From the IMG/VR virus record IMGVR_UViG_3300009703_004110, positions 1 to 64,000 of that record: 64,000 nucleotides of DNA; one strand, written 5' to 3'. The first letter of the stretch is position 1; each line of letters begins with the position of its first letter. Made by a program: the position numbers and the translations under genes. This document shows, piece after piece, positions 3,016-60,812 of this stretch. The notes below the pieces were generated by a model that worked only from the letters and a program-made list of their open reading frames with translations, was not told where the DNA came from and searched no databases.

Positions 3016-3312
3016 TCACTTCTTCTTTTTACCCCTCGCCTTTAGCAGGGACCATGACTCAATGAATTGCGCTTTCTCTCGTGGACTCAGACTGTTTAAC
3101 ACCTTATCGGTTTTAACTTGCATCAGATAAGCTTTAGACCCTTTAGTCACATACTCAGTCCACATCCTTACGGGGGACTCTTGATATACTACAAGGGCAA
3201 AATCTTTTACCTTATAAACCCTTACTTCTACATCCTGTGCTATTAGGAATTCTAGATCTAGTTCTGGTGCATGTTTTAGGAATGGAATTCTATTATACTT
3301 ATCAACTACCAT
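3016..3312 (-). CDS. Hypothetical protein
   Basis: 98-aa ORF in a run of minus-strand genes. Confidence 0.65.
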   Translation of the reverse strand: MVVDKYNRIPFLKHAPELDLEFLIAQDVEVRVYKVKDFALVVYQESPVRMWTEYVTKGSKAYLMQVKTDKVLNSLSPREKAQFIESWSLLKARGKKKK

Positions 3313-3335
3313 ATCAAATTCTCTCAGAAATAATA

Positions 3336-3653
3336 TTAGCCGGCTTCGTTCTTAATCAGCAGATCAAGATGGTAAAGCAGCGGCTCCTTTTGTTCATTTG
3401 GGAGGGACTCAAACACTTCCTCAAAAGAAACTTGGGTGTGAGGATCCGCTTGCTCCATATTCTTATCTTGAAATATGGCTTCGCGGCGGAACCATCTTGG
3501 GCCTTCGGAAGTGGAAAATAACCTATAATTTGGTGAGCCCTTTATGGTCATCAGCCCGGGGATTATGCCTTGATTCATTAAAACATTAACCAATGTGTCC
3601 AAATGTCCTGGATATGTCATATCAAACTCGGTTAATGCAAACGTTCTTGTCAT
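3336..3653 (-). CDS. Hypothetical protein with FEEV..LxYHLD motif
   Basis: C-terminal SFEEVFESLPNEQKEPLLYHLDLL shared with other ORFs in the window. Confidence 0.75.
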   Translation of the reverse strand: MTRTFALTEFDMTYPGHLDTLVNVLMNQGIIPGLMTIKGSPNYRLFSTSEGPRWFRREAIFQDKNMEQADPHTQVSFEEVFESLPNEQKEPLLYHLDLLIKNEAG

Positions 3654-3674
3654 GGTTGAATTGTACCTTGGAAG

Positions 3675-4070
3675 TTATCTTTGGTTCAAGAAAAAGATTA
3701 AATTAACTTGCTCCTCTTTGGTGCAACGCTCAAATAGCGTCTTCATCAAGAGTGGCTGATAGATCCTTCCATCGCGTTCCTTTAGCGCACCGGACGCTAT
3801 CTCTGCTTCCTCAAGAAGGCTTTTATTCCCCTCGGTATCAATAAACATAAGATATTGTCCTTGGGCCGCATGGTTTGCTTTCAGCTCTATGTAAGCTCCC
3901 TCCGGTTCCTTTAAAGCATGCCGTCTTCTCTTTGGCGCCATTAAACATTCCGGCCAGTCCATATAATTCGATAACCAAAGATCTTCCATTGCATTAAAGT
4001 CGTTTAAATTAACTTTGCTTAATAACTCCGCGCCCATCACCAAGTGCATGTGACTCCAGGCGTTCATCAT
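3675..4070 (-). CDS. Hypothetical protein
   Basis: Start moved to MMNAWS at 4070 (GGAG RBS, ATGA overlap with the upstream frame). Confidence 0.65.
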   Translation of the reverse strand: MMNAWSHMHLVMGAELLSKVNLNDFNAMEDLWLSNYMDWPECLMAPKRRRHALKEPEGAYIELKANHAAQGQYLMFIDTEGNKSLLEEAEIASGALKERDGRIYQPLLMKTLFERCTKEEQVNLIFFLNQR

Positions 4071-4420
4071 GGTGGAAGCTCCAACCCCTCTTGGCTTGAA
4101 ACGGTAATGGTTCCCACCGGATAATTTAGAGATTTTCCTCCTGGGATAGCCCGGATATTTCGTTTCAGCTTTGCCATCTTTTGCTCCCCGGCGTACATCC
4201 ATCTGATAGCCTTATAAATATAGTACCCTCGACTCCAAACCCGGTCATAAAAACCTTCGAAATTTCTTTCACGATGACAATTATGGTTGTTTAGCCGATA
4301 TCTAAATTCGGCGTCATAAATTTTAGTGCTTTGTCGTTGATAATCAAGTAGAATATAAAGATAAGTTGATGAGCCATCTAAGTGTCCTGTTTTATATATA
4401 AAACTATCAACTGCATTTAT
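4067..4420 (-). pseudogene. 118-codon open frame without a canonical start at its 5' end
   Basis: Stop-free frame (INAVDSFIYKTGHLDG...GLELPP*) whose TGA overlaps the next ATG; not in the ORF track. Confidence 0.45.
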
Positions 4421-4496
4421 TCATGATTATCAATAATTTATAAGATTTATTTATACGTGATACCTGATAAATTTAGATCGTAATTTATACGGTCGT

Positions 4497-4859
4497 TTGA
4501 CCCTTCGGATTTATATGACCAAGTCTTGTCCAATATCTATAGCTGAATTACCGGAACCTAACCAGGTTTTTGAGGCTATAGACGGCAATATTGTGGTAGT
4601 TTATCGACCTGATTTATTCTACATGATGTCCGCCAGAATGGAACTCGCTCCGGCCTTTAGCTTTCATGAGAAGCCGATTATTGAGGACCAAGAGTCTGAC
4701 AGGTATTTAATGCATGTTGCTACCGCTGATTTCGTAGAGGGTCGCTTCTATATCTTACTAACGGTTGGCTTTGGTCATATAGAGGTCGTATTAGATGCAA
4801 CTACTGTTAAGATGCATTTAGAAAAGGAGTTTGTAAGTAACTATGATATTCAAAAATAA
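4497..4859 (+). CDS. Hypothetical protein
   Basis: 120-aa ORF overlapping the next gene; start may be the Met at 4515. Confidence 0.6.
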   Translation: MTLRIYMTKSCPISIAELPEPNQVFEAIDGNIVVVYRPDLFYMMSARMELAPAFSFHEKPIIEDQESDRYLMHVATADFVEGRFYILLTVGFGHIEVVLDATTVKMHLEKEFVSNYDIQK

Positions 4860-5784: not shown

Positions 5785-5801
5785 GTTCCAGCTTATTTGG
5801 C

Positions 5802-6749: not shown

Positions 6750-6759
6750 TATATCTCCA

Positions 6760-26746: not shown

Positions 26747-29125
26747 TTACATCACTTTTGCAGCAAAAGTTGCTAACTTACTCCTTTCTCCCCTAACTAG
26801 GGTTATATGCCCAGAGCCTTCAAATTCTTTAAATTTGTCAACTACGACGCCCAAGCCAGATGTTTTTATGTTTAATTTATCAGAATCTATCTGGTCCAAA
26901 TCTCCAAGTAATACAATCTTTGAGTTATTGCCCATTCTTGTAATTAAAGCTTTGGCTTCTTTCATATTGATATTCTGAGATTCATCAATAATAAAATAAG
27001 TATTAGGAAGCGTTCGTCCCCTAATATAAGATAATGCTTCGATTTCAATCTGACCTTTCTCGAACATCAGATTGATATAACCACCGCCATGTTTTCCTAA
27101 TAGAACTTTAATATTGTCCATCACAGGCTGTAACCAAGGCAACATCTTTTCTTCTTTGGTTCCAGGCAAAAAGCCGATCTCCTTAGAAGTACTTTCTGCG
27201 GGACGAGATATGATTATCTTTTCATAAGTACCAGCTTGAAGCTCCTGCAAACCTGCAGCAATAGCAAGCAAAGTATTATGTGTTACAATATAATCATCTG
27301 TAATATACAGATGATCTTTGCTGTCGATCATGATGCATTGAGTCTCTTTCTTTGAAAGCTTATCGATTTTATCAATATATTTTCTAAGATTAACAGAACT
27401 CGTTGGACGCCACCTATTAGCCTTTCTTGATAATAAAAATGGACAAAATTCTTTAGAAAGTGAAATGGTTACTCTAAAAGACTCTTTACCTATTTTGGTT
27501 CTTCCTTTGTATTTATAAGTAGTAAATCTACTATTTACAGTTGCTTTGCCACCTAACGAACGAACAATTTCTGCCAAGTCATTTGCAAGCTTGGCAGATG
27601 TACTAGTAAATGTTGATTTTAAACCAGATTTGGTCACTGTGCCGTCTGTATCCATCAAGCCTCTGATTATAGACAATCTATCTCCTACGGATGATAGCTT
27701 ATAATCCTTTGGAATAAACTTATCTTCAGAACCTAAGCCCTGTAATTTAAGCTCAGATAAAAACTCTTTTAGTGGATTTGCAAAATTATTTCTTTTGTTT
27801 CCATCTTTAGTAATCCTATAATCATATTTCGAACCATTTATTTTTGAAATCTTACACCCAATTGACGGTAAGTAATCTGCAAAAAAATCTAAAATTTCAT
27901 TATCTGCCGATGATAAACATGGTGAACCAGATTTTATATATCCGTCTCCAAGTAAACATCCTAATATATATGGATCAATTTTTAACTCTTTAAAATCAAA
28001 CTCTATAGGAGATACAATTGGAATTGAGTGATTTCTTTTTCCATTTTTATTTCTCAAGGATTTTGAAATCTCTTCTAAAGATTTAACTTCACCTTTTCTA
28101 TTATAATCACGATCTCTCTGAGTTCTTGTTAGCCATAAATGTTCTATACATGACTCTGCAGATGTACCATCAGAAAATGTTATCTTATAGACATCCTTTT
28201 TTCCCTGCGGAAATACCCCAATAACATTAGCCATAGATCCGTCCGGTGTTAATACTTTACTTCCAAGCTTAATATCGCCCATTTTAACCCAACCATCTGG
28301 TGTTAAAATTCTCGAATAAAGAGGCTGCGCTTTTCCGCACCCCGCCATGCCAGTTAAGGTCACCATTGAAATACCGGGATCTAATAGCAATTCTAAAGCA
28401 AGAGTTTGCTCTTTATTTCTCGGTCTAATACCCTGAACTTTAAACTTTTTAGTAGAGCCGGCATAATGTAGCTTTCTCCAAATGCCATCTGTCCAGACCC
28501 TTGCTAGAGCGCTTTGCTGCCCTGACTTTAAAATTAAGAATTCATTTGAATAGTAGACGTCATCTAGATCAAATTCTTTCGGATCTATTTCTCCTTCTGC
28601 ATAAAAAGTATCTATAATTGACTCTTCAACCGCTAAGGTATGGACTCCGGTGAACTCACCTTCTTCTCTTTGCGCGATTAAATCTGATATACAGCAACAA
28701 TCAATCTTAAGCGCATCACACTTAACTCGTAAAGCAATATCCTCACTGACCAAGGTTACATTATCAAATACAGCCTTTGACTGCTTGGCTACTGCAATAA
28801 TTCTATTATCGACTATATCCTTCATATTTGGCGGAAGGACTGATAAATCTGATGTTGATATAACAAAGATTCTTGAATTATTTTGGGTAATGACACCCTT
28901 AAAAATACTTCCAGTCTTTCTTAGCGCATCAAGCCTTCTATTTACCTGCCTCGCTGAGGCGCCAGTGACATCTCTATATGTTTTAAGTTTGTCAAGCTCC
29001 TCCAAGACTTCTAGTGGAATATAGATGTCGTGGTCTTGTATGACATCTGTTAGTTCTGGAAACGCTATAAGTGATGAGGTATCAACTACTAAAATAGCCC
29101 TTCCTAATGCTGAGCTTTTACTCAT
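26747..29125 (-). CDS. phoH: PIN-PhoH (PhoH2/YlaK-type) protein, intein-containing
   Basis: PIN VVDTS/VLEELD/DNRI; Walker A GMAGCGK|T; IGFLPG, IRGRT, IIDESQN, TRMG. Confidence 0.93.
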   Translation of the reverse strand: MSKSSALGRAILVVDTSSLIAFPELTDVIQDHDIYIPLEVLEELDKLKTYRDVTGASARQVNRRLDALRKTGSIFKGVITQNNSRIFVISTSDLSVLPPNMKDIVDNRIIAVAKQSKAVFDNVTLVSEDIALRVKCDALKIDCCCISDLIAQREEGEFTGVHTLAVEESIIDTFYAEGEIDPKEFDLDDVYYSNEFLILKSGQQSALARVWTDGIWRKLHYAGSTKKFKVQGIRPRNKEQTLALELLLDPGISMVTLTGMAGCGKAQPLYSRILTPDGWVKMGDIKLGSKVLTPDGSMANVIGVFPQGKKDVYKITFSDGTSAESCIEHLWLTRTQRDRDYNRKGEVKSLEEISKSLRNKNGKRNHSIPIVSPIEFDFKELKIDPYILGCLLGDGYIKSGSPCLSSADNEILDFFADYLPSIGCKISKINGSKYDYRITKDGNKRNNFANPLKEFLSELKLQGLGSEDKFIPKDYKLSSVGDRLSIIRGLMDTDGTVTKSGLKSTFTSTSAKLANDLAEIVRSLGGKATVNSRFTTYKYKGRTKIGKESFRVTISLSKEFCPFLLSRKANRWRPTSSVNLRKYIDKIDKLSKKETQCIMIDSKDHLYITDDYIVTHNTLLAIAAGLQELQAGTYEKIIISRPAESTSKEIGFLPGTKEEKMLPWLQPVMDNIKVLLGKHGGGYINLMFEKGQIEIEALSYIRGRTLPNTYFIIDESQNINMKEAKALITRMGNNSKIVLLGDLDQIDSDKLNIKTSGLGVVVDKFKEFEGSGHITLVRGERSKLATFAAKVM
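27275..28330 (-). mobile_element. Class 3 intein (Ala1) with LAGLIDADG endonuclease, in PhoH Walker A
   Basis: AQPLYS...HLW...GLMDTDG...TQCI...VTHN|T; 352 aa. Confidence 0.9.
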
Positions 29126-33762: not shown

Positions 33763-35205
33763 TTACTTTTTAAAGGTTACGTTATACTTTTCGTCCTCTT
33801 CATCATCTTGTATGCTGAGACCAAGCTCATCATAAGTATAATGAATTGTCTCACCTTCATTATCGACAGTTTCTAGGTTTATAATCCCTGGCCAGATATC
33901 ATGTATATACTCTAATACATTTTCAACGTGCTTAGGATCTAACGTACCAATTTGTCCACTCTTGTGCTCTAGCTCGATGCCCATAGCGGAGGCCTTACTT
34001 ATTGCGATAATGGGGGCACGGTAGTTGTAAATACCCCTTGCTATATATTCTACCACGTCCTCTACATCCGTACTTTTAATTTGTATGATTTTCTCTTTTG
34101 CTCGGTTGTAACCCTGCTTATAGACGAACATCTTAAGCTTGTCGACAATGGCCTGTGTCAGATAATTTCTCAAGAAGGAAATATCGTCTTCATCTTCTAC
34201 TATCTGAAGTATTTTTTGCAGCCCCGTTACGTCTGAGCTGCCTGCTTTATACATTCTATCCCATCGCTCTCTAACGTCATTTAAGATGGTGAAGCCCAAA
34301 AAGTATGGATTTATATTAAGCTTATTGCTACCTGGTTGAACAACACGTTCATGAATCTTGACAAACTCAAGATACTCGTGTGGAGATAATTCATCATCAG
34401 AAAGCAGATACATTAATTCTGCATGAATGAAGCTGGCAAAACCTTCATTCACAATCTTAGTGCAGTACTGAGGATAGAAGTAAAAGGACTCTTCTCTGAT
34501 GATCTCAAATATATCTCTTTCCCATGGTTCTAAATTGGCATAATTGGCGAAGAACCAAAGAAGGTCCTCTTCTGGTCGCGGAGGAAACTGGTCATTCTCA
34601 ACCACCTGCTTAAAAGAAGGCTCCTTGTCAAGCCCGAACATATCGTCAAACTCGTTCTCTTTTCTTTTTTTCCAGACTTTCTTTCGACCCTCATATGGCT
34701 TTCTATGTATATCTCTCTTCCAGTTAATATTTTTGTCCATAGCAAATGCTGTGTCCATAATTCTTTCAACTGTATCAAGACCATACTTTGTAATATATTC
34801 CTCTACTCTGGCTGCTCGCTCTGCTGCATGATAGACCATCTTGCGATCTGTTTTCTTAAACAAATAGTTGTTCTTAAAGAAGTGCACGTGCCCTATGACG
34901 TGAGCAATAACCATTGTATTTGCGATGTTACTGTTAGATTCGAGCAAGAATGCATAGGAAGGGTCATTGTTGAGCACAAGCTCATAAACCTTAGACATGC
35001 CCATCTCACCCTGAGTCTTCTGATACTCATAACTTTGACCATAAGACCAGTGACGAGCCCTAGTGGGAAGACCATAGCTCATAATTTCTAGCATTACTTC
35101 TTCCGGTACAACTTCCCACATAATCGGGAAGAAATCTAACCCAAGATCCTTCTCGGCCGTTTCTTCGAACATTTTGGTTCGTCTGGCTAAAACTTCATTC
35201 ATCAT
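33763..35205 (-). CDS. spoVR: SpoVR/YcgB family protein
   Basis: HWSYG, YELVLNNDP, AHVIGHVHFFKNN, TKIVNEG, NPYFLG. Confidence 0.93.
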   Translation of the reverse strand: MMNEVLARRTKMFEETAEKDLGLDFFPIMWEVVPEEVMLEIMSYGLPTRARHWSYGQSYEYQKTQGEMGMSKVYELVLNNDPSYAFLLESNSNIANTMVIAHVIGHVHFFKNNYLFKKTDRKMVYHAAERAARVEEYITKYGLDTVERIMDTAFAMDKNINWKRDIHRKPYEGRKKVWKKRKENEFDDMFGLDKEPSFKQVVENDQFPPRPEEDLLWFFANYANLEPWERDIFEIIREESFYFYPQYCTKIVNEGFASFIHAELMYLLSDDELSPHEYLEFVKIHERVVQPGSNKLNINPYFLGFTILNDVRERWDRMYKAGSSDVTGLQKILQIVEDEDDISFLRNYLTQAIVDKLKMFVYKQGYNRAKEKIIQIKSTDVEDVVEYIARGIYNYRAPIIAISKASAMGIELEHKSGQIGTLDPKHVENVLEYIHDIWPGIINLETVDNEGETIHYTYDELGLSIQDDEEDEKYNVTFKK

Positions 35206-35704
35206 CTAGCTCCTCATCAAATAGGTCAAGGAAGTCCTTGGTTGACATATTTCTTGTCTCATCTAAAAATGTATCAAAATCTGCACCGCCACGTATCTTG
35301 GTACCACTATATATAATCCTATCTAAAGATTTTGGTACTGGTACGCCATTAGAGTTGGGACTTAATGACGTGTATTGCATCTTCTTATTAAAGACATCCA
35401 TGTGGTAGATCAATTCATTACGAATATAATCTGGGCACTCATCAAAAACCTCTTCAAATGGTATAGTGACATATCTTATCGACGCTCTTGCACTATTTCT
35501 CAAAGCTTTTCTGCCAACAGCGGTAGATTTATCTACCTTATGAGGCCCAGGCGCCCTTCCAACGACCTTTTTCTTCCATATAGCTCCATCTCTTCTGATG
35601 GTTACAATGAAACCTGTATGCTTTAAGGTGAATTCTCCTCTTTCCAGAGAGATTGGAGTTAATAGCCCTGTTTTAAAAGCCTTTTTAACTGCCTCAGACA
35701 TCAT
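35195..35704 (-). CDS. Hypothetical protein with FEEV..LxYHMD motif
   Basis: IPFEEVFDECPDYIRNELIYHMDVF; lies between yeaH-like and spoVR. Confidence 0.7.
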   Translation of the reverse strand: MMSEAVKKAFKTGLLTPISLERGEFTLKHTGFIVTIRRDGAIWKKKVVGRAPGPHKVDKSTAVGRKALRNSARASIRYVTIPFEEVFDECPDYIRNELIYHMDVFNKKMQYTSLSPNSNGVPVPKSLDRIIYSGTKIRGGADFDTFLDETRNMSTKDFLDLFDEELDDE

Positions 35705-36915
35705 GACTTTACTTTTCTTCTTCGCTTCCTAACAACTCGTTTCTTTTTATTAGAAACATCATCTATATTGAAGAACTTTTTAAGAGCGTCAAAAACATCA
35801 TCACGTTCTTGAAGTCTAAGTGTAACATACCTAGTTCTGGTGATGCCTTTATCTAAGATATCTGATAGTCTATCATGATTATTAAACCATGCACTTTCTC
35901 GTTCTACATTTGGAATTATCTCTCCGTATCCTATTGCCCTACACATAGGAAGAAGTCTTTTGACATATTCTAGGCAAATATTATTATCATTTCCCCAGTT
36001 ATCACCATCACTGAACTCAATTAAATAGTTATTCCATCTATCTGGCGGATGATGTGATGACATATGTTCATAAGCAAGCTTAAAGGCTGAGCTGCACTGA
36101 GTTCCCCCCGAAGAGTTAATGGAGAAGAACCTTTGCTCGGTTTCAATCCAGGCCTTAGAATCATGGGCTATAAAGACTATATCTATTTTTTTGTATCGTC
36201 TTCTTAAGAATTGAACCATCCAAAAGAAAAAGCTTTTTGCGATGTGCGTCTTCTCTTCACCCATAGATCCTGAACGATCCATTAGAAGATAAACAGCGGC
36301 ATTAGAATGGTATTCTTTAGTAACGTCCCACTCTCTGTACCTAAAGTCATCTTGGTGAAACTCACCTACTTTGGCATCGCCTTTAGCGGCGTTTCTAATC
36401 AGGTTCTGTATTAGAGTTCTTTTGATATCAAGATTTGGCATAATGCCTTTTTTCTCAATAGAGGAAAACTCTTCTAATTCTGACTCAATCTGGGTCGCAC
36501 CTTTTGGCTCCATCCACGGTAAATCTAATTCTTCCAGGAGAATATCGACCACTTCGTTGATTGACACTTCTGCATCGTAATACTTTTCCCCATCTTCATT
36601 ACCGGCGCCTTGGCCCTTACCTTGTTGACTCGGACCTTTGCCTATCTTATATTTATCGCCCTTTTTGCCATCAAGACCTTGTCCAACCTCCTGGTTGTCT
36701 TTAATTCTGCCATATTTAAACCTATATCTGTCAAGATACTTTACCGGTACTTTAATTTTCTTATCGCCATCGGATCGTATGACATCATATTCTGTGATCA
36801 GGTCTTTACCATTTTTACGAATAGCGCGCTTAACCAGCTCTTTATGTCGAGCTGAGTCTCGCTTACCTCGTCTTTTCAACTTCCATATATCAGAAAGGCT
36901 ATCATACTTTGGCAT
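35701..36915 (-). CDS. yeaH: YeaH/YhbH (DUF444) vWA-domain protein
   Basis: D..RH, LELP-like LDLP, MDRSGSM (MIDAS), SGGTQCSSA, SDGDNW. Confidence 0.92.
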   Translation of the reverse strand: MPKYDSLSDIWKLKRRGKRDSARHKELVKRAIRKNGKDLITEYDVIRSDGDKKIKVPVKYLDRYRFKYGRIKDNQEVGQGLDGKKGDKYKIGKGPSQQGKGQGAGNEDGEKYYDAEVSINEVVDILLEELDLPWMEPKGATQIESELEEFSSIEKKGIMPNLDIKRTLIQNLIRNAAKGDAKVGEFHQDDFRYREWDVTKEYHSNAAVYLLMDRSGSMGEEKTHIAKSFFFWMVQFLRRRYKKIDIVFIAHDSKAWIETEQRFFSINSSGGTQCSSAFKLAYEHMSSHHPPDRWNNYLIEFSDGDNWGNDNNICLEYVKRLLPMCRAIGYGEIIPNVERESAWFNNHDRLSDILDKGITRTRYVTLRLQERDDVFDALKKFFNIDDVSNKKKRVVRKRRRKVKS

Positions 36916-39575: not shown

Positions 39576-40923
39576 TTTCATCACCAATTTCTTCTGCCCA
39601 GTCATCAGGCACACTCAAAATTCTGGATTTTGTAAAGTCTTTAAGCAAAGAGAGCTTGCCCTTTTTGCCGTCCCTATTTTTAACAACATGGACCGCCATA
39701 TCCTCCCTAAGGTGCTCTTCATCTCGTTTTTCGATTAGCAAAACAATGTTGGCATTATCACCAATCATCTTAGAACGAGCCAAATCCTCCAGATCGTTGC
39801 CAGGGTCTTTTGCGTTCTTATTTCTTGCCTTCCTCTGTGATGCAGTAATTACTGGAACATCTTTTGCTCTCGCAAACTCAGCCATATTTTCAGCAATATA
39901 CCCTAGATCCAGCCAGTCAGAATTATTTATGCTGTTTGGCTTCATAATTCCAAGATAGTCTATGCACACTAGGTCTGGCTTGAATTCTGCTATAATAGTA
40001 TCATACCTGGCCTCTATATCTGTCATCTTTGAGCCACGAGGCATGTCACAGATGTATAGGGTCTTATCGTATTTACTCTGAAAGGTAAGCGTGCTTCTCC
40101 ATCTTTCTTTCTCTTGAGCAGTAAGCATTCCTCTAACAAGATGCTTATGTTCCATTCCAGATATGCAAGCGTCTATTCTCTGCTCGGTCTGTGCTTTGGA
40201 CATCTCTAAAGTGAAGTAAAGAATATTGGCGCCATCCTTTTTGACTGGGGCGCCATGCAGAGGGTTGTTAGTTCCCAGCCAAGCATTTATTCCTATATTT
40301 AGCATCAGCATTGACTTACCAGATGACGATGGTCCTGCAATAATCATTAGCTCTTGCTTTTTGATACCCCAAATATATTCGTCAACTTCGCGATAGCCTG
40401 TCAAGACACCAGAGACTTCTCCCGGATTTGCCTCAACATACTTATAAGCTTCCAGCCTATCTTTTGCGGAATCTGCGAAGTTTCCTTCTGCAAATACTGC
40501 GCTTCTTTTCATTCTTTCAATTTTGGCACCGATTCTCAAAACTTCAGTTTCAAAATCTTCAGCGTCAAATTCGTCTTCATCGACTGAAACAGATTCTGCC
40601 AAAGCTCTAGCTAAGAACGCTTGGTATCTTTTTTTGATTTCATCGACGTGAAATCCGACCTCTGCCTCTACACACGTAGATTCTCTAATGACTCCTATAA
40701 GTTCAATGTGATCAATATCATCTAATAAACTTTCTTCCATTAATTCGAAAGTAGGAGGAGACCTGTATCTTTTAAAATAATCTCTTACGGTCCTAGCAAT
40801 GGGCTTATAATTTGGCAACATTGCTTCGATCAATAAATTAGTATCGATCATTCTTGAGACTTGATTGAACTCAATCGGACCCTTCATCATATAATTGATG
40901 ACCTTTCTTTCTCTCAAGGACAT
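39565..40923 (-). CDS. dnaB: Replicative DnaB-like helicase
   Basis: GPSSSGKS, FTLEM, CIDYLGIM, TASQ, KNRDG. Confidence 0.93.
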   Translation of the reverse strand: MSLRERKVINYMMKGPIEFNQVSRMIDTNLLIEAMLPNYKPIARTVRDYFKRYRSPPTFELMEESLLDDIDHIELIGVIRESTCVEAEVGFHVDEIKKRYQAFLARALAESVSVDEDEFDAEDFETEVLRIGAKIERMKRSAVFAEGNFADSAKDRLEAYKYVEANPGEVSGVLTGYREVDEYIWGIKKQELMIIAGPSSSGKSMLMLNIGINAWLGTNNPLHGAPVKKDGANILYFTLEMSKAQTEQRIDACISGMEHKHLVRGMLTAQEKERWRSTLTFQSKYDKTLYICDMPRGSKMTDIEARYDTIIAEFKPDLVCIDYLGIMKPNSINNSDWLDLGYIAENMAEFARAKDVPVITASQRKARNKNAKDPGNDLEDLARSKMIGDNANIVLLIEKRDEEHLREDMAVHVVKNRDGKKGKLSLLKDFTKSRILSVPDDWAEEIGDENDV

Positions 40924-42401
40924 TTACTTTCTCCAGTTACATATGTGTACGGTTTATTTTTTATCCATAATCTCTGCCCGGCATCATAAATTTTTACCAG
41001 TCCCAACTCCTTAGCGTGCTCCTTTTGAGATATTTTTCTAATATCCATGTTTGCTCTACAGTGTAGCCTATTATATGTTTTATTTAAATCTGTCCACTTC
41101 CATCCTAATATATCATGAGAATGAATAAATCCAATTTGTTTCAAGAAGTTTCCAGTTCCGTATCTTAAATCAACCCAATAGTGTATTTCATTTATAGATT
41201 CCAAAGAACCCTCTAAATGTTTCAATAATTTAGAAAAACCGCCCATAACAATGTGATTATTTTTTGAGACCGTTCTTTCTATTTTTAAAATATTATTTGA
41301 GACTTTATAAGAAATCATCATAATTAACTTATCATTAATTTTAAGACCAATATGCCTCGCCTTAATCCTACCCATTAAATGATTTTCTGTTAGAAATTGA
41401 TCTGCATCTTTTTGATTTATAGTGCAAATATTAGTTTTTCTTCCGTGTATTTTTTTTGACTTAAATAACTGGTTGTTTATCATTGATTCTAAAATATCAA
41501 GTTTGTAATTTACTTCATCTTCTCTAAACTGTAATATTTTAAGACCAAGATCTTCATATGCTTTTCTCATATGAAAATGATAATATTTGTCATCTTTTAC
41601 TAACTCTGAATGCCAATATAGCCCATCAACATTTATTGCGAGTTTATTATTTAATTTAAAATCAGGTTTGTATCTAAGATTTGGATACCTCTCTAAATCA
41701 AAATATTTATTATGCAACTCTATAGATAACTTGTTTTTTAAAATATTTTCAATATTTGTAATACCTGGCTCATAAGTCTTTAAAAAATTAACAAACTCTT
41801 CTTTTGTATGATTCTTATGTGAATATATCCATCTATATACTATAATGTTTGTAATATTATATTCTTGCGCCCATTCATATGCAGTTTTTCCATACAATAT
41901 TGTATTTTTTCTGTCCTCTCTTTCTTTATAGGCCTTGCTTCTGAAATAACTTTTATGTCCATATTTATTTAATATAGTCTTATTTTTTTTATCTATAACT
42001 TCTTTTGTAGAATTAAAGTGCACTCCGCCATATTTTAAATTAGATATTTCAGCAATTCTCGATATTCTTGCTTCTTTTTCATCAGCTTGACTTCTTACAA
42101 TATTCCATTTCGATAATTTTTCGAATATCAAAGATCTATTTACGCCATATTCTTCCGCTATTTTAATAGGTAATTTCTTTAAAACTACGTATTCTTTATA
42201 AAGCTGCTTTTTTGTAATTTTAGATTTAGACGAACGCTTTTTATACTTAGTCAGCATAAACCTATCTTTATATCTAGACAATGTTGTTTTGCTATATCCA
42301 AACTCATCAGATATTTGCTTTATAGTTTTATTTTTTATTATATACTGTTCAAATAACCAATCTTTATTTTTGTATTTTTCTAAAGTCTTTTCCTGCGACA
42401 T
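40914..42401 (-). CDS. Free-standing homing endonuclease (HTH repeats + PD-(D/E)XK/Vsr-like nuclease + C-terminal domain)
   Basis: KPDF..LAINVDGLYWHSE, QFREDE, VDLRYGTG, IYDAGQ; wedged between the loader and helicase genes. Confidence 0.8.
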   Translation of the reverse strand: MSQEKTLEKYKNKDWLFEQYIIKNKTIKQISDEFGYSKTTLSRYKDRFMLTKYKKRSSKSKITKKQLYKEYVVLKKLPIKIAEEYGVNRSLIFEKLSKWNIVRSQADEKEARISRIAEISNLKYGGVHFNSTKEVIDKKNKTILNKYGHKSYFRSKAYKEREDRKNTILYGKTAYEWAQEYNITNIIVYRWIYSHKNHTKEEFVNFLKTYEPGITNIENILKNKLSIELHNKYFDLERYPNLRYKPDFKLNNKLAINVDGLYWHSELVKDDKYYHFHMRKAYEDLGLKILQFREDEVNYKLDILESMINNQLFKSKKIHGRKTNICTINQKDADQFLTENHLMGRIKARHIGLKINDKLIMMISYKVSNNILKIERTVSKNNHIVMGGFSKLLKHLEGSLESINEIHYWVDLRYGTGNFLKQIGFIHSHDILGWKWTDLNKTYNRLHCRANMDIRKISQKEHAKELGLVKIYDAGQRLWIKNKPYTYVTGESKCP

Positions 42402-45548: not shown

Positions 45549-45854
45549 TTATATCAGTCCAAGCTTCTTGATTAATTTCTGAGCGTCTTTTGAAACTTTT
45601 GCGTGTACTTTTGCCGGATCAAGAAACGGACCCTTAGAGCCCTCTCTGATGCGTATAACGTCCATCGCTAAAACATAAAATATATAATCAGTTCCAAGCA
45701 ATTTATACCTGCCTTTCCACTTTGGAGCCGCTCCATATCCGGCAGTTACATCTTTTAACCTAGTAAATAACTTCGAATCATTAATTGCTCTTTGAGCAAT
45801 GGATACTGAAGGCTTTCTTTGTCTGCGTCTCGCACCTGCGCCAAAAATACTCAT
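45549..45854 (-). CDS. Hypothetical basic protein
   Basis: 101-aa ORF ATGA-coupled to the helicase. Confidence 0.65.
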   Translation of the reverse strand: MSIFGAGARRRQRKPSVSIAQRAINDSKLFTRLKDVTAGYGAAPKWKGRYKLLGTDYIFYVLAMDVIRIREGSKGPFLDPAKVHAKVSKDAQKLIKKLGLI

Positions 45855-48316
45855 TTCTCGTTCCTCTTGATTTTGAAACCAGGCTCTGATGAATATATTC
45901 TGTATCTAGCCTGACTATGTTCTCTTAGATATTTACAGTTATCATAGAAGTCTACAACTGCTGCATTGATCTTTCCTTCATTACGTCTGATAACTCTTCC
46001 AATTCTTTGAAGAGCCCTGGCCGTCGACTTACCGGAGCCGGCCAAAATAAGAGCGTCTAACTCAGGTATGTCAATGCCTTGGTCAAAAATACGAGAAGCA
46101 ATCATGACATCTAAATCCCCGTCTCTCATCTGGCGGATAGCCTTCATGCGGTCCGCTGTGGAATTCATACCGTTGAGACTATTGACCTTCAAATTGGGAT
46201 CCAAAAAATCTTGAATCACTTTTCCGTGGTCAACCTTCGTCACCAGAATCAAAACCTTTCTTCCGGCATCTGACATTTTTTTAGCAACTTCTGCAATTTT
46301 GAAATTTCTATAATCATTGTTAACAATAAAGTTATTGTATACTTCTGGATAAGTTTTGCCAACGCCCCTGATTGTTGGAATGTTTATAAATGTAATGTAC
46401 GGCCTTACTAACCAGTTGGTGTCTATTAGTTCGGTCGCAGTAATGTCACAAAATTTTGGCCCGCTAACAGCTTCTATCAGAATGTCGTCGCCATTTTCTC
46501 GCCACGGCGTACCCGAAAGCAAGAACCTATGTCTAGCGGAAGCTGACTCTTTATGAAGAAACTGCACTGTCTCGGCCGCTGCATATTGGCATTCATCAAG
46601 AAAGAAAAGCTCTGCAGATCGGACAAGGTCTTTGACCGCCTCTCTCTTTTGCATATTCTTTGTAAGTGCCTTGCCCTTCGTACTATCTGAATCTAAGAGC
46701 TTAACTTTCTTGTTGAATGCCGAAGCAGCAGACCATATGGTTACAATGTTAATCCCATCCACTATGTCACATTGTCCATCGCCTACGATTCCACACTTTA
46801 CGCCAAGTGATTCTTCTATGGTTGACTTCATTTGATACAGTAATTCTTTTCCAATAACATAAACCACTGTTTTGACATTGTAATGTCCGGCGATCATCGC
46901 AATGACCAGAGATTTACCAGAATTATGTGTTACTGTAAAGTCGTCTAATAAATATCTATTATCTCCATCTACTTGGAATCCAAAATACTCTTGAACCCCG
47001 GCTTCCTCATAGGAAAAGTCGGTCCTTAGTACGCTCTTCTTCTGAAGTCGCTTCTTAGCACGCTTTCTTGCTAGTTTTGTTGGAATAATACTGCAGTCTC
47101 CAGATATGCTAACTCTAAAATATGTTCCAGTAAATCCAGTCGTTCTAATGCTCTTTTCGCATTTTTTTATATAAGCGGCTAGGCCGATACTTCTGGATAA
47201 GAAGCATACATCTTCAGCTAATTTTTTTGATTTTGATATATAATCAAATCCACCGTGCGACAAAGATCCATCTGAATCTAATAATCCTGCCAATATAGCG
47301 AGCCTATCTATTTTAGAGGCTGTTTTGTATTTTGCCGGAATATACTTATTTTTAGAGCCTAACCCAAGAAGTTTTAAATCTCGTAACTCATTTCTAAGTT
47401 TATTTTTATACTTACCACTTCCTTTAAAATAGTAAGTTATCCCGTTCTTTCTTATTTCTAAATTATATTTTTTTGCTATAGTGTGTATATAATTTGATAT
47501 AACCTCATCTGCTGTCGTTATTCCAACCTGACCTTTTAAGCTTCCATCACCAAGCAAAAGACCTAAAAAATATGGATCGGTAGCCAACTCTTCCCTTGCT
47601 TTAAAATCAATTGGTACCCTGAATAATTTATGAATATGCTTAAATGTCTTACTTTTATTCTCCCAATCAGAAAACTTTATATCTATTACATCGCCATTAA
47701 ACTTATTATTTATAGTTTTGTTTGTTCTTTGTAACGACAAAACATGTTCTTGGTTTATAATAAAACTATCGCCCTTTACAGGGTTTATTTTAACCATTCT
47801 GTCAGTTCCGGCACAAAGCTTTAGAACCATTCTAGGGGCACTATCCGGTCCCATTAGGCGATCACCAACCATGATATTTTCTACGGCTTTAATAGAGCCG
47901 TCATACATTAAAATCCCTTGGCCTTTAGCATGGCACCCGGTAGCTGCACGTAGGATTCCGCTTTCGGCTTTGATTGCCGCTTCCACAGCAGATATCTGAT
48001 AGTCTCTCGGAATAAAAACACTGCTTGGGTCAATAGCTATCGAGCTTCCATATTGTAAAGGATCACGCTGATCCACTATCTTATATTTGTACTTATTAAC
48101 TTTTAGGATGTTCTCAACCACATGAAGCATACCGATTGGGAATACACCATTTCTCTTGTTAAAGAGGCGGTATCTTCCGTCCCATCCAGTATGCTTTTTC
48201 ATGAACTGATAACTCTGCACCATATAACTAAGGTGCTTGTCAAGCTCACGCAGGACCTTCCCATCAGACAGGCCTGTTAGCTGACACTTTGAGTTATTTA
48301 CATAAATAGTGAGCAT
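45851..48316 (-). CDS. SF2 DExD/H-type helicase (UvsW-like), intein-containing
   Basis: PRDYQ, AATG|SGKS, DECQ, SGTP, QGIDIP, QRIGRVIR; start at MLTIY. Confidence 0.92.
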   Translation of the reverse strand: MLTIYVNNSKCQLTGLSDGKVLRELDKHLSYMVQSYQFMKKHTGWDGRYRLFNKRNGVFPIGMLHVVENILKVNKYKYKIVDQRDPLQYGSSIAIDPSSVFIPRDYQISAVEAAIKAESGILRAATGCHAKGQGILMYDGSIKAVENIMVGDRLMGPDSAPRMVLKLCAGTDRMVKINPVKGDSFIINQEHVLSLQRTNKTINNKFNGDVIDIKFSDWENKSKTFKHIHKLFRVPIDFKAREELATDPYFLGLLLGDGSLKGQVGITTADEVISNYIHTIAKKYNLEIRKNGITYYFKGSGKYKNKLRNELRDLKLLGLGSKNKYIPAKYKTASKIDRLAILAGLLDSDGSLSHGGFDYISKSKKLAEDVCFLSRSIGLAAYIKKCEKSIRTTGFTGTYFRVSISGDCSIIPTKLARKRAKKRLQKKSVLRTDFSYEEAGVQEYFGFQVDGDNRYLLDDFTVTHNSGKSLVIAMIAGHYNVKTVVYVIGKELLYQMKSTIEESLGVKCGIVGDGQCDIVDGINIVTIWSAASAFNKKVKLLDSDSTKGKALTKNMQKREAVKDLVRSAELFFLDECQYAAAETVQFLHKESASARHRFLLSGTPWRENGDDILIEAVSGPKFCDITATELIDTNWLVRPYITFINIPTIRGVGKTYPEVYNNFIVNNDYRNFKIAEVAKKMSDAGRKVLILVTKVDHGKVIQDFLDPNLKVNSLNGMNSTADRMKAIRQMRDGDLDVMIASRIFDQGIDIPELDALILAGSGKSTARALQRIGRVIRRNEGKINAAVVDFYDNCKYLREHSQARYRIYSSEPGFKIKRNEK
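46922..47935 (-). mobile_element. Intein with LAGLIDADG endonuclease in helicase Walker A
   Basis: G|CHAKGQ...LAGLLDSDG...VTHN|S; 338 aa. Confidence 0.93.
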
Positions 48317-48376
48317 GCGTTCTCCATACCTAGATTTTACTCTAGGCACGAAGAAATGCTTGAATTTATATGTAAA

Positions 48377-56385: not shown

Positions 56386-57966
56386 CTAAATATTGACATA
56401 CTCTTTAACCCATAATCTTTGGCCTGCATCGTAAATTTTACACCAACCAAGTTCTTCTGCGTGTTCTTGTTGAGATAGGGATCTATTGTCCATATTTGCT
56501 CGACACTGAAGTCTATTATAGGTATGTCGTAAGTTCGTCCATTTCCACCCAAGAGTTTCTTTTGATTCTATAAATCCCATTTTTTTTAAAAAATTACCAG
56601 TTCCGTATCGTAAATCAACCCAATAATGGACAGATGAGAACTCATTATGTTTCTTCAGAAAACAGAATAATTTAGAGGCCCCGCCTACTACTACTGCACC
56701 ACATTTTGATGATAATCTGTCTATTTTGCATATTGAATTTTTAATCTTGTATGACAGTATCATTACCAATTGATTTTTATATTTAAGTCCAATATGTTTA
56801 GATTTAATATCACCCTTAATATGAGTTTCTTTCAAGAACTTTGAAGCTTCTTTTTGAGATAAAATAATAGGCTTTGTTTTTCTGGCAAAAATTCTATGTG
56901 ATTTTCCTAGATTATTTAAAACCATGGATCTAACTATTGGCATTTTATATAGGACCTCATCCTCTCTAAATTGAAAAATTCTAAGACCTTGTTTTTCATA
57001 TTCCCGTCTCATTTTAAAATGATAGCGCCTATCCGGTTGTTTTAGCTCTGAATGCCAATATAGCCCATCAACATTTACTGCTAACCCACCTTCAAACTTA
57101 AAATCTGGCCGATAACGAAGTCCTGGGAAATTCTTTAGATCATAAAAATTATTATATCGTGATACAGAAAATTCATCAGCAAAAATTCTCTCTATGTTGG
57201 TTATATTATTGTTGTAATCTGAAGCTATTATCTCAAGATCTTTCAAAGATGTTTCGATATTAATTCGTCTAATGAGATAATCATATGGCACCACAAAAGC
57301 TTCTGCTAGCTCTTTAACTGTTTTTCCATCTATAGAAATAGATGTTTGATTTTTAACTCTTGATGCGATTCGTTTTTTGCAGACAATATCAAGTTCTGAT
57401 GGATTCTGAACTCCGTATCTAGATACCATTGTTTCCTTAAATTTAGCAGCACCTATTTCGCTTTGCATAATGTGTCTCACACCATATTTGTTTTCTATTT
57501 TATTATAAATCTTTTTTGATGTTATATGGCTTCCGAAGCCTATACCCCCATATTTATGCTCCAATGATTTGGCCACCTTCTCTGCTATCTTGGCATTTTT
57601 CATTGGATTCTCAATACCATATTTTTTAAGATTAGCTTCCTTTGTTTTCTGTCGTATATCGTCATTTAATAGACAACACTCGTGTCCATATTTTTTTAAA
57701 TTAGTTTCTCTAATTTTTTCTTTTGTAGAATCTAAGGAGAAGGGGTTTTTTACGCCGTATCTGTCTAAATTAGTTTTCTCAAAATTATTGATTCTAGAGG
57801 CTTGTGCTTTATCTTTGTCTTTTTTTATATTAAGCCTTTTTATGGCCCTATAAATCGTAGCCTTAGGAATATCAAGTTCTTTAGATAACTCTGATAAACT
57901 TTTGTTATTTTTAATATAATGTAACTTCAAAAAATCTTCAGTAAGGATGGGGTATTTTTTGCTCAT
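56386..57966 (-). CDS. Free-standing homing endonuclease, paralogue of 40914-42401
   Basis: Repeated N/TL.KYG..NP units; RPDF..AVNVDGLYWHSE; VDLRYGTG; IYDAGQ. Confidence 0.8.
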   Translation of the reverse strand: MSKKYPILTEDFLKLHYIKNNKSLSELSKELDIPKATIYRAIKRLNIKKDKDKAQASRINNFEKTNLDRYGVKNPFSLDSTKEKIRETNLKKYGHECCLLNDDIRQKTKEANLKKYGIENPMKNAKIAEKVAKSLEHKYGGIGFGSHITSKKIYNKIENKYGVRHIMQSEIGAAKFKETMVSRYGVQNPSELDIVCKKRIASRVKNQTSISIDGKTVKELAEAFVVPYDYLIRRINIETSLKDLEIIASDYNNNITNIERIFADEFSVSRYNNFYDLKNFPGLRYRPDFKFEGGLAVNVDGLYWHSELKQPDRRYHFKMRREYEKQGLRIFQFREDEVLYKMPIVRSMVLNNLGKSHRIFARKTKPIILSQKEASKFLKETHIKGDIKSKHIGLKYKNQLVMILSYKIKNSICKIDRLSSKCGAVVVGGASKLFCFLKKHNEFSSVHYWVDLRYGTGNFLKKMGFIESKETLGWKWTNLRHTYNRLQCRANMDNRSLSQQEHAEELGWCKIYDAGQRLWVKEYVNI

Positions 57967-58909: not shown

Positions 58910-58917
58910 TTAAACTC

Positions 58918-59124
58918 CTAGTCCTCTGCGTTAGTCTCCTCTATGACTTCTGCTTCGGCATCTTCGTCAGCTTGTGACTGATAAGGATCGACGCCCTTAT
59001 CAGTATCTGACACTAAATCATCAATTCCATATCTCATTAACTTCTTAACCTTAGCCAGTTTCTTAGTAAAACCACCAAGCGGTCTTTTAAACACTTTTGT
59101 TTCGCCATTCTTTTTGAATGCCAT
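58918..59124 (-). CDS. Hypothetical protein
   Basis: 68 aa, GGAG RBS. Confidence 0.6.
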   Translation of the reverse strand: MAFKKNGETKVFKRPLGGFTKKLAKVKKLMRYGIDDLVSDTDKGVDPYQSQADEDAEAEVIEETNAED

Positions 59125-59141
59125 TTTATCTCCACCTATAT

Positions 59142-59528
59142 TTAGGTTGCTTCATCTAGATTATAGATGATTTGCCACTTTAATCTATCAGAAACTTCTT
59201 CGCTCTTTAATATTTCTTCAACTCCGCCGCTAACGCCAAGCTCTTGACATATCTCTGCAACCACTTCTGGCGGTATATCTGCCATCTGTCTACCTAGAGA
59301 GTCTATCTGTCCTTTAAGATTGCCTATTATTTTAACAGCATTTTGAACAGTCGCCTTTTGTAGATCTTTTTTAGTGATCCCGGGGTCCAATTCGGTCGGA
59401 ATAGTGTATGGCACAGACTCTAAAGTCTTCTCCATGCCCCAAACATTTCGCTTGATAATATTTCTTTTATCTGAGCGATTTATTCGGTCCCTTCTATTCT
59501 GTTCTATTTGGTCCTTAGTTAGCTTCAA
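59142..59528 (-). CDS. Hypothetical protein with degenerate EE..IYNLD motif
   Basis: TTG start with GAGG RBS; C-terminal VEEILKS...IIYNLD. Confidence 0.65.
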   Translation of the reverse strand: MKLTKDQIEQNRRDRINRSDKRNIIKRNVWGMEKTLESVPYTIPTELDPGITKKDLQKATVQNAVKIIGNLKGQIDSLGRQMADIPPEVVAEICQELGVSGGVEEILKSEEVSDRLKWQIIYNLDEAT

Positions 59529-60420
59529 GCAGCCTCCTCATACCATCCTCAAATGATATATTCGGATTATACCCAATTGCTTTTAATTTTGAGATACTTG
59601 CCTGAGATCTCATAACGTCACCCGGTCTTTTATCTGCGTATATGGCCGGCGGTGCACCAGATAATTTATGAACTTTATTTATAGTTATCCTATCTTCGCA
59701 CCCTACATTGAACGCCTCACCATCAAACCTACCTTGATGTATTGCCACCAAAATGTTCGCTTGGACCACGTTGTCTACGTAACAAAAGTCTCTGTATTGT
59801 TCACCGTTCCCATATATCGTTGGCCTTCTGTCGGTCTTGGCACAATTTATAAATGCCGGAATAACCGCAGCATATGGGGAGTCGTGTCTCTGTCTCGGCC
59901 CAAAGACATTAAAGTATCTTAGGGACACCGTATCTAATCCGTAAATCTTAGAGTATAGCTTGCAGTATTGCTCTCCCATAGTCTTGTGCATAGCGTAAGG
60001 AGATTTCGGATTACAGTCCTTGCTCTCTGGCGTTGGTTGAACTAGTGTACCACCATAGATAGATGATGAGGATGAGAATACCACCCTCTTTACTCCATTC
60101 TGCCGAGCAGCCTCTAAGATGTTAATAGTGCCTGTAACGTTTACATCATGTGTGCCTACCGGATTCTCTATTGACTTAGGAACTCCCGGGTGAGCAGCTA
60201 AGTGAAAGACAATGTCCGGCTTCTCCATTGAGAATATTTGATACATCCTCGGTAAGTTTTCGATACTAACTTTTAAAACATTGATGTCGAAATAATTCAG
60301 ATTTGATTCCAAGCCTGTGGATAAGTTGTCGACAACTACGACTTCATGCCCTTTATCCACAAGTTTATCCACAAGGTGGCTGCCAATAAAGCCCGCTCCG
60401 CCCGTAACTAACGCTTTCAT
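59515..60420 (-). CDS. NAD-dependent nucleotide-sugar epimerase (extended SDR)
   Basis: TGGAGFIG, SSSS, YAMHK (YxxxK), RYFNVFGP. Confidence 0.93.
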   Translation of the reverse strand: MKALVTGGAGFIGSHLVDKLVDKGHEVVVVDNLSTGLESNLNYFDINVLKVSIENLPRMYQIFSMEKPDIVFHLAAHPGVPKSIENPVGTHDVNVTGTINILEAARQNGVKRVVFSSSSSIYGGTLVQPTPESKDCNPKSPYAMHKTMGEQYCKLYSKIYGLDTVSLRYFNVFGPRQRHDSPYAAVIPAFINCAKTDRRPTIYGNGEQYRDFCYVDNVVQANILVAIHQGRFDGEAFNVGCEDRITINKVHKLSGAPPAIYADKRPGDVMRSQASISKLKAIGYNPNISFEDGMRRLLEAN

Positions 60421-60812
60421 CAATAGTCCTTGTTGATAAGTACATCTAAATTGTAAGTTAAAATATTTCTAATGTCTTCATTTTCAGAAGTCAGTAGATC
60501 TTCTAAAGCATTGTTACCATAACAATTCTCATACTCTTTAACTTTGTTTAGAAGAATAAAGACCAGAAAGTCTTCAATTTTAAATTGATACTTAAAATCC
60601 TTTTTCATTTTCATTGCAATAAACTCTTTGATTTCTACTTCTATATTGTGCTCTATAGACGTCTGATCATAAACTGGACTAATGGCTGTATTCATATTTA
60701 CAGAAAATTGATCTGAGAAAAGATTTGGATTTAATATATCATTACATCCTATTAAACTCTCATATATATCTGCACTTTTTATTTCATCACTTATTTTTAT
60801 TCCATTGCTCAT
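60420..60812 (-). CDS. Hypothetical protein with LED..LTYNLD motif
   Basis: C-terminal LEDLLTSENEDIRNILTYNLDVL. Confidence 0.65.
   Translation of the reverse strand: MSNGIKISDEIKSADIYESLIGCNDILNPNLFSDQFSVNMNTAISPVYDQTSIEHNIEVEIKEFIAMKMKKDFKYQFKIEDFLVFILLNKVKEYENCYGNNALEDLLTSENEDIRNILTYNLDVLINKDY

What the first reader, a model, noticed from the sequence alone, without database searches (positions are those of the whole stretch)
3016..60812. Second dispersed micro-domain, FEEV-x-LxY(H/N)LD, grafted onto unrelated orphan proteins
Seen: SFEEVFESLPNEQKEPLLYHLDLL (3336-3653), PFEEVFDECPDYIRNELIYHMDVF (35195-35704), ALEDLLTSENEDIRNILTYNLDVL (60420-60812) and GVEEILKSEEVSDRLKWQIIYNLDE (59142-59528), with weaker matches LMKTLFERCTKEEQVNLIFFLNQ (3675-4070) and TDKVLNSLSPREKAQFIESWSLL (3016-3312). 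It is mostly C-terminal, and the rest of each protein shares nothing obvious. Carriers are interspersed within conserved operons (between yeaH and spoVR; flanking the epimerase). Inference: a ~25-aa two-helix docking tag that binds one common partner, separate from the N-terminal leader system.
Basis: partly seen in the sequence, partly recalled or inferred. Interest (0 to 1): 0.65.

Follow-up and report, generated by a model that had tools for sequence, protein, structure and literature searches.

The report
Conserved tail of a phage small-protein family
The repeated FEEV..LxYHLD motif is real, but in most carriers it is the best-conserved C-terminal end of one fast-evolving family of about 90-residue proteins of unknown function, present in 22 or more copies in this huge uncultivated phage and its relatives, and not a tag stuck onto unrelated proteins.

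Summary
All six quoted peptides are at the stated coordinates. A pattern built from the four strong copies finds two more copies elsewhere in the 332-kb genome, where shuffled proteomes give none. Profile searches find 22-26 carriers, all on the coding strand and almost all within 7 residues of the C-terminus.

A profile search of 1.84 billion proteins finds about 75 further metagenomic proteins of 49-145 aa. These align over their whole length: helix ending in GLF, strand Y.L.GT.Y, a conserved Trp, then FEEVxDxVPxxIQxKLLFHLDLF. AlphaFold places the motif as strand 5 plus helices 2 and 3 of one compact alpha/beta domain (pLDDT 89, pTM 0.73).

The family matches no Pfam or PHROG model and no known fold. 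The gene between yeaH and spoVR has positional orthologues in four related phage contigs, at 42-45% identity against 77-82% for its flanking genes.

Two things keep some modularity alive. Carrier 59142-59528 shares only the motif. In a sister phage the motif also ends about 11 Imm5-like helical proteins.

No common partner was identified, and the function is unknown.

The parts
3336..3653 (-). Family member, 105 aa. Motif at residues 76-99 (nt 3357-3428), close to the C-terminus.
   Evidence: External-only motif profile E 7.7e-12. Full-length profile E 1.1e-13 over residues 37-103. AlphaFold model: pLDDT 73.7, order helix, three strands, two helices.
35195..35704 (-). Family member, 169 aa: whole domain at residues 1-107, motif at residues 82-105 (nt 35390-35461), plus a 64-aa acidic tail. 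It lies between yeaH (35701-36915) and spoVR (33763-35205) and overlaps both.
   Evidence: Full-length profile E 2.2e-19. 42% identical to P0015, which sits at the same position in L021. Orthologues also in L019 and L032/L033.
60420..60812 (-). Carrier, 130 aa. Motif at residues 102-125 (nt 60438-60509), upstream of the epimerase gene. Kinship of the N-terminal part is ambiguous.
   Evidence: Full-length profile E 1.6e-4. External motif profile E 0.078. hhalign aligns only residues 95-128, E 9.6e-5. No other homologue found.
59142..59528 (-). Carrier, 128 aa. Motif at residues 102-126 (nt 59151-59225), downstream of the epimerase gene. The N-terminal part reads as helical (my reading of the sequence; no model made) and shows no similarity to the family.
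   Evidence: External motif profile E 6.7e-4. hhalign aligns only residues 97-125, E 2.3e-4. Its N-terminal score is among the lowest of all carriers. No other homologue found.
45549..45854 (-). Probable divergent member, 101 aa. The family's N-terminal hallmarks are kept (SKLF; YKLLGTDYIFYVL), but the C-terminal motif is eroded (ends LIKKLGLI).
   Evidence: N-terminal-only external profile E 3.7e-4. Full-length profile E 0.011. Sequence.
3016..3312 (-). Possibly a degenerate paralogue (IPFL, a strand-like stretch and a Trp at roughly the expected spacing), but not significant.
   Evidence: Full-length profile E 0.089, rank 26 of 416. hhalign probability 1%.
3675..4202 (-). Its C-terminal end lines up with the motif in register, but the match is not supported statistically.
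   Evidence: Full-length profile E 4.9. hhalign E 0.01, probability 4%.

Best explanation
The motif is the C-terminal strand plus helix-turn-helix (beta5-alpha2-alpha3, about 27 residues) of an unnamed alpha/beta domain of about 85-100 residues. That domain defines a fast-evolving multigene family of small proteins. So far the family has been seen only in a clade of roughly 330-kb uncultivated phages and in related metagenomic contigs.

This genome holds 22-26 copies. Four are clear in the window and up to three more are degenerate. They occur singly between conserved genes, or in tandem arrays such as 154.2-157.7 kb.

The tail is the most constrained part. It supplies much of the hydrophobic core: F66, V69, F/L70, V73, I77, L81, L82, F83, L85, L87 and F88. 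It also carries two likely helix N-caps (S/T-F-E-E and D/S-x-P-E-E).

Inferred, not shown:
- These are accessory host-interaction or counter-defence proteins whose variable N-terminal surface gives specificity.
- The conserved polar positions E67, Q/K78, H/N84 and D86 may form a shared interaction site.
- The tail can occasionally be recombined onto another N-terminal domain.
For: Recurrence:
- 6 copies against 0 expected; 19-23 carriers at E<0.01; 22 by an independent tool.

A family outside this genome:
- 102 proteins at E<=1e-3 among 1.84 billion, of which about 75 are not from this genome. They are 49-145 aa long, with the motif at or near the C-terminal end in most (a few carry an extension after it).
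- Metagenomic contigs carry tandem arrays of roughly 8-13 paralogues per locus.

Whole-length kinship:
- Conserved N-terminal columns in the family alignment.
- Full-length profile hits for the carriers.
- The N-terminal-only test gives p = 4e-7.

Structure:
- P0091 model: pLDDT 88.7, pTM 0.73, one compact domain, with the motif at residues 62-88.
- The window protein 3336-3653 shows the same order of elements.

Selection acts on the protein, not the DNA:
- Pairwise nucleotide identity at codon positions 1/2/3 is 0.42/0.71/0.36.

Fast evolution with a conserved position:
- The orthologue in L021 is 43% identical, against 77-82% for its flanking genes.
- The gene is absent at that junction in more distant relatives.
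Against: - 59142-59528 shares only the motif.
- In sister phage G001 about 11 helical Imm5-like proteins of about 190 aa end with the same element, so the tail is not strictly tied to one N-terminal fold.
- The external set was retrieved with a tail profile. Its tail conservation is therefore inflated (2.2 against 0.86 bits per column).
- No coordinates were available to verify that the helices are buried.
- The function is not shown by any result.
Confidence: 0.65

Rival explanations
1. One reading: the tail is an autonomous docking tag that brings diverse small proteins to one common partner. The most concrete version is that the terminal [H/N]-L-D-L-F works like a bacterial beta-clamp-binding motif. 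Another version is that it targets cargo to the capsid, as C-terminal cargo peptides do in encapsulins.
For: - The element sits at the extreme C-terminus in 20 of 23 carriers.
- It occurs on at least two N-terminal scaffolds: the alpha/beta domain, and the Imm5-like helical proteins of G001. 59142-59528 may be a third.
- The family consensus at the end is H/N, L, D, L, F (45+32, 69, 74, 58 and 77 of 82 rows).
- A review defines canonical clamp-binding motifs as Q-phi-x-[L/M]-[F/L], often C-terminal. It names QLDLF as the strongest peptide and reports only a modest effect for Q-to-N (PMC11139829).
Against: - AlphaFold models these residues as helix inside a compact domain at pLDDT above 90, not as a disordered tail.
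- Conservation extends 20 residues upstream of the pentapeptide.
- Many of this genome's own copies break positions 4 and 5 (NLDEA, NLDKF, NLEQI, HLNEM).
- No phage clamp was found with PF00712, PF02768 or PF09116.
- No large, replisome-sized protein of the phage ends this way.
- No binding test with a candidate partner could be run.
Confidence: 0.2
2. The tail is an oligomerisation module: helix hairpins of two paralogues would pair into a four-helix bundle, giving homo- or heteromers.
For: Helix 3 is hydrophobic on more than one face (my helical-wheel reading of the columns). Many paralogues are encoded side by side and could be made together.
Against: The only test, two copies of P0091, gave no verdict (score 0.01 against a mark of 0.42). 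This counts neither for nor against. A small domain can bury such a helix between its sheet and helix 1.
Confidence: 0.1
3. The similarity reflects a conserved DNA element at the 3' ends of genes (a promoter, a recombination site or a translational-coupling signal), or it is a compositional or chance artefact.
For: Carriers are tightly packed and overlap the start or stop codons of their neighbours.
Against: - Third codon positions are only 36% identical, while second positions are 71% identical.
- Shuffled and reversed controls give no hit below E 0.27, and there were 0 regex hits in 200 shuffles.
- Relatives exist in other phages with different DNA.
- Promoter-like and terminator-like sites are not enriched.
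Confidence: 0.02

Closest known systems
Lineage-specific multigene families of small accessory proteins in large phages, for example host-takeover or internal-protein gene sets (from general knowledge, not tested here)
   Same: Small proteins in many copies per genome, in tandem arrays or as single insertions between conserved genes. They evolve much faster than neighbouring core genes and have no assigned function.
   Different: This family has its own sequence signature and its own predicted fold. It matches no Pfam or PHROG model. Its timing of expression and its location in the cell or virion are unknown.
F-box / PRANC-type adaptor motifs
   Same: A short helical element with the pattern L-x-x-[LV]-P-x-E-I-x-x-x-[IL]-[LF]-x-x-L-D, attached to variable recognition parts.
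   Different: Only the first half of an F-box could be aligned. The Pfam F-box model scored E 0.16 in 1 of 16 proteins and matched none of 82 at E 0.01. No Skp1-like partner is expected in bacteria.
Bacterial beta-clamp-binding motif Q-phi-x-[L/M][F/L] (PMC11139829)
   Same: A C-terminal pentapeptide [H/N]-L-D-L-F, close to the strongest known binder QLDLF. Many partners share one hub through one short motif.
   Different: Position 1 is H or N, not Q. The residues are predicted to be helical and structured. The conserved block is five times longer than the pentapeptide. Binding was not tested.
Imm5 / Imm5_like putative immunity proteins (PF14423, PF21805)
   Same: In sister phage G001 the motif ends proteins of about 190 aa whose N-terminal part is annotated Imm5_like in 7 of 17 paralogues.
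   Different: My own scans stayed below the Pfam cut-off (E 0.01-0.03). None of these proteins is in the window's genome. The window's carriers have a different N-terminal part.

Membership tests
Any Pfam-A or PHROG family | Match to a curated profile above its threshold | tested here: not met
   Six window proteins, ten external members and all 82 rows of alignment A4 were scanned. No family was hit by more than one member, and none exceeded a Pfam cut-off.
Any solved or predicted fold | A structural match clearly above background | tested here: not met
   Foldseek against PDB: best E 0.14-0.2. Against BFVD: best E 0.028. VIA-align: best Z 4.3 and 5.3 at rmsd 2.8-5.1. ESM Atlas: TM 0.43 or lower. 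Sequence search of PDB chains: only chance hits.
F-box | Three-helix domain of about 40-48 residues matching PF00646 | tested here: not met
   E 0.16, covering profile positions 1-18 only, in one protein. None of 82 members at E 0.01.
Beta-clamp-binding motif | Pentapeptide Q-phi-x-[L/M]-[F/L] | tested here: inconclusive
   Positions 2-5 fit the family consensus. Position 1 is H (45 of 82) or N (32 of 82), never Q as the commonest residue. Several of this genome's own copies break positions 4 and 5.
Beta-clamp-binding motif | Lies in a flexible tail or loop and binds the clamp pocket | not testable with these tools
   AlphaFold predicts helix at pLDDT about 93. The host and its DnaN are unknown, because the genome comes from a subsurface metagenome.
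The new alpha/beta family itself (window carriers) | N-terminal hallmarks (helix ending in GLF, strand Y.L.GT.Y, conserved Trp) in addition to the tail | tested here: inconclusive
   Met for 35195-35704 (E 2e-19, full length). Moderately met for 3336-3653. Ambiguous for 60420-60812. Not met for 59142-59528.
PrkA-YeaH-SpoVR operon component (35195-35704 only) | Conserved position between yeaH and spoVR in relatives | tested here: inconclusive
   Present directly upstream of spoVR in L021, L019 and L032/L033; yeaH itself is seen upstream only in L021 and L032/L033. Absent in L028-L031, L034 and Ralstonia phage RsoM2USA, and not detected in the more distant L035-L042. It is a lineage-specific insertion, not a core part of the operon.

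The most novel reading that the evidence does not exclude
The roughly 27-residue tail ending in [H/N]LDLF is a portable docking module. A clade of huge phages would use it to bring dozens of rapidly diversifying small domains (the alpha/beta domain, Imm5-like immunity-type domains and others) to a single hub, such as the host sliding clamp or the capsid interior. That would be a bacterial-virus counterpart of F-box-type adaptor families.
Probability: 0.15. Interest if true: 0.75.

Novelty: new member of a known kind. Interest (0 to 1): 0.4.

Why it matters
Huge phages carry hundreds of small genes with no annotation. This work groups 22 or more of them in one genome, and about 75 metagenomic proteins, into a single definable family with a confident fold model and a clear signature. 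That turns scattered orphans into a tractable target for structure determination, virion proteomics and defence or counter-defence screens.

The family inserts at varied places, including inside the prkA-yeaH-spoVR gene string. It evolves about twice as fast as its neighbours, as accessory conflict genes tend to do. If the tail proves to be a shared docking element, it would reveal a hub that these phages exploit.

Tried and rejected
Searches that found nothing:
- Megablast and tblastn against GenBank phages, using the window, a carrier and two external members: no match.
- ESM Atlas feature search: no usable hit.
- The search for related loci with the family alignments failed: one alignment had no conserved stretch, and in the other scan none of 93 pattern matches was confirmed by tblastn.
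- A degenerate DNA pattern for KLLFHLDLF gave 7 chance matches in IMG/VR, all false, because YTN also encodes Phe.

Tests without a verdict:
- The homodimer prediction for P0091 gave no verdict. It is not evidence either way.
- Promoter and terminator scans around the 154-158 kb array and around 2.5-4.7 kb showed no enrichment over shuffles.
- The search for relatives carrying the epimerase neighbourhood found only the source contig, a 1.4-kb fragment and distant giant-virus contigs. Orthologues of 59142-59528 and 60420-60812 could therefore not be examined.

Leads dismissed:
- The DUF826 and phrog_311 hits of 59142-59528 (E 0.007 and 0.2) were not shared by any other member and are treated as chance.
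- The ferredoxin and herpesvirus gB sequence hits in the PDB are chance.

Other points:
- No RNA-seq run holds this DNA.
- No alternative genetic code was used.
Full report
SETTING

The window is the first 64 kb of a 332,270-bp virus record. The record has about 39% G+C and about 90% of its genes on the minus strand. It was cut from a 391,083-bp subsurface-metagenome contig.

The window encodes typical large-phage functions:
- topoisomerase IA;
- a DnaB-like helicase;
- a B12-dependent ribonucleotide reductase;
- PIN-PhoH;
- a UvsW-like helicase;
- the prkA-yeaH-spoVR gene string.

Three of these genes contain inteins. No close relative is present among GenBank phages.

Yes. All six quoted peptides are present where stated.

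A pattern written from the four strong copies finds six copies in the genome's 416 called proteins. Two of them lie outside the window, at 285436-285867 and 294219-294701. In 200 shuffles of the proteome the pattern was never found.

Iterated profiles raise the count:
- 12 carriers at E<1e-8, with about 10 weaker ones.
- 23 carriers at E<0.01 once external relatives are added to the profile, against nothing below E 0.27 in reversed or shuffled ORFs.
- 19 at E<0.01 with a profile trained only on external sequences.
- 22 by the genome-search tool.

All hits lie on the coding strand, and 20 of the 23 end within 7 residues of the motif. The largest cluster is a tandem array at 154.2-157.7 kb, in which at least 10 of 13 consecutive small genes are carriers.

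They do lie in tandem with a true member, and 3016-3312 shows family-like N-terminal features.

WHAT IS IT?

A profile of the 22 in-genome copies was run against 1.84 billion representative proteins. It returned 102 hits at E<=1e-3. About 25 are this genome's own proteins. One (P0057) is an unrelated repetitive protein. The remaining 75 or so are metagenomic proteins of 49-145 aa that carry the motif at or near the C-terminal end, most of them ending in (V/I)(S/T/P)FEEV(F/L)(D/E)xVPxxIQEKLLFHLDLF(R/T).

These external proteins align over their whole length. The shared elements are an N-terminal helix ending in G-L-F, a strand Y-x-L-x-G-T-x-Y, a Trp present in 66 of 76 rows, and then the motif.

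AlphaFold models:
- The canonical member P0091, with an 82-row alignment, gives one compact domain (pLDDT 88.7, pTM 0.73). Its order is helix 1, five strands, helix 2, helix 3. The motif is strand 5 plus helices 2 and 3, residues 62-88.
- The window protein 3336-3653 gives the same order of elements at lower confidence, pLDDT 73.7.

Neither model matches a known fold. No member matches a Pfam or PHROG family.

ARE THE CARRIERS RELATED BEYOND THE MOTIF?

For most of them, yes.
- 35195-35704 matches the external full-length profile at E 2.2e-19 over residues 6-119.
- 3336-3653 matches it at E 1.1e-13 over residues 37-103.
- An N-terminal-only profile built from external proteins finds 35195-35704 and 251185-251457. 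It also finds a new window gene, 45549-45854, which keeps the N-terminal hallmarks but has an eroded tail.
- With the motif removed, the carriers as a group outscore other small ORFs (Mann-Whitney p = 4e-7; 13 of 25 above the control 95th percentile).

The exceptions:
- 59142-59528 has no detectable N-terminal kinship.
- 60420-60812 is ambiguous.
- Neither has any other homologue in the 5.8-billion-protein collection.

CONTEXT AND EVOLUTION

Metagenomic contigs from related phages share 40-82% identical core proteins with this genome. They carry arrays of roughly 8-13 paralogues among other small genes.

The gene between yeaH and spoVR has positional orthologues in four related contigs:
- L021: 42-43% identity, against 77-82% for the flanking genes.
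- L019.
- L032 and L033, which belong to the complete 335-kb sister genome G001: 45% identity.

More distant relatives, and Ralstonia phage RsoM2USA, have yeaH abutting spoVR directly, or carry a DUF7487 gene at that junction. The member is therefore a lineage-specific insertion that has since been retained.

G001 holds 13 matches to the family profile.

Codon-position identities of 0.42/0.71/0.36 show that selection acts on the protein and not on a DNA signal.

EVIDENCE FOR SOME MODULARITY

In G001, about 11 of the matches are proteins of about 190 aa with these features:
- an N-terminal part with no similarity to the alpha/beta domain;
- an Ala/Tyr/Asn-rich centre;
- the ending GDFSEIFEMLTDEQKKxVIYNMDV.

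Seven of their 17 paralogues carry a precomputed Imm5_like (PF21805) annotation. My own scans stayed below the cut-off, at E 0.01-0.03. One paralogue matches phrog_38757 at E 3e-9.

These tail matches are modest: 8-18 bits, or E 6e-5 to 8e-3 per genome. They also represent a single evolutionary event, because the proteins are paralogues of one another. I rate this as probable, not proven. Together with 59142-59528, it means the tail is not strictly bound to one N-terminal fold.

HOW IT MOST LIKELY WORKS

Shown:
- The family exists.
- Its copy number, position and fast divergence are as described above.
- The tail is placed inside a predicted compact domain.

Inferred:
- The tail is conserved mainly because it forms the hydrophobic core and helix caps.
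- The proteins are accessory host-interaction or counter-defence factors with a variable recognition surface.
- The conserved polar residues E67, Q/K78, H/N84 and D86 might form a shared site.

A lead from the literature, untested. The terminal [H/N]-L-D-L-F resembles the beta-clamp-binding motif Q-phi-x-[L/M]-[F/L]. Of such peptides QLDLF binds best, and Q-to-N has only a modest effect (PMC11139829).

Points against this lead:
- The residues are predicted to be helical and structured.
- Conservation runs far upstream of the pentapeptide.
- Many of this genome's own copies break the pentapeptide.
- No phage-encoded clamp was found.
- No replisome protein of the phage ends this way.

VERDICT

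- Observation: confirmed.
- Interpretation: partly supported. It is a real, recurrent C-terminal element, but mostly the conserved end of one paralogous family and not a graft on unrelated proteins. A common partner is not shown.
- Novelty: an undescribed protein family of a familiar kind, namely an expanded family of small accessory phage proteins.
- Interest: moderate. It would be higher if the tail proves to be a docking module.

Noticed in passing
window 1-2500: G+C is about 58% here, against about 39% in the rest of the genome. The stretch holds five copies of a roughly 30-nt element, near 28-56, 1003-1033, 1650-1678, 1724-1752 and 2467-2495. On the minus strand three of these copies (at 54, 1671 and 1746) fit the sigma-54 -24/-12 promoter pattern TGGCAY-N5-TTGCA exactly, and two plus-strand matches lie at 20 and 2466. 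The other 330 kb contains only one further match, at 305529. Each element precedes a small GC-rich ORF. IMG/VR classes the record as a provirus cut from a 391-kb contig, so this end may be of different origin.
   Followed up: partly
   Followed up: no
window 26747-29125, 29511-32675, 45851-48349: PIN-PhoH, the ribonucleotide reductase and the UvsW-like helicase contain LAGLIDADG or Hint-type intein segments. The reductase orthologue in L021 is 681 aa and lacks the intein.
   Followed up: partly
window 40914-42401 and 56386-57966; L032 1126-2571; L034 1571-2995: Paralogous proteins of about 500 aa (DUF7487 in 56386-57966) look mobile. In two relatives a homologue is inserted between yeaH and spoVR, the same junction that holds the family member in this window.
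   Followed up: partly
window 35195-35704, residues 150-169; L019 6-311: The acidic tail of the 169-aa carrier ends in STKDFLDLFDEELDDE. This resembles the start of the motif in a second family gene that lies upstream of the orthologue in L019 (TKDFLDLFDRCPNDVKEELVYHFGLL). It may be a remnant of a fused tandem copy.
   Followed up: no
L043 1-2834, L045, L050, L051 (sister phage G001): G001 holds an array of proteins of about 190 aa with an Ala/Tyr/Asn-rich low-complexity centre, an Imm5_like N-terminal part and the motif at the C-terminus. They are present in about 11 copies there and absent from the window's genome.
   Followed up: yes
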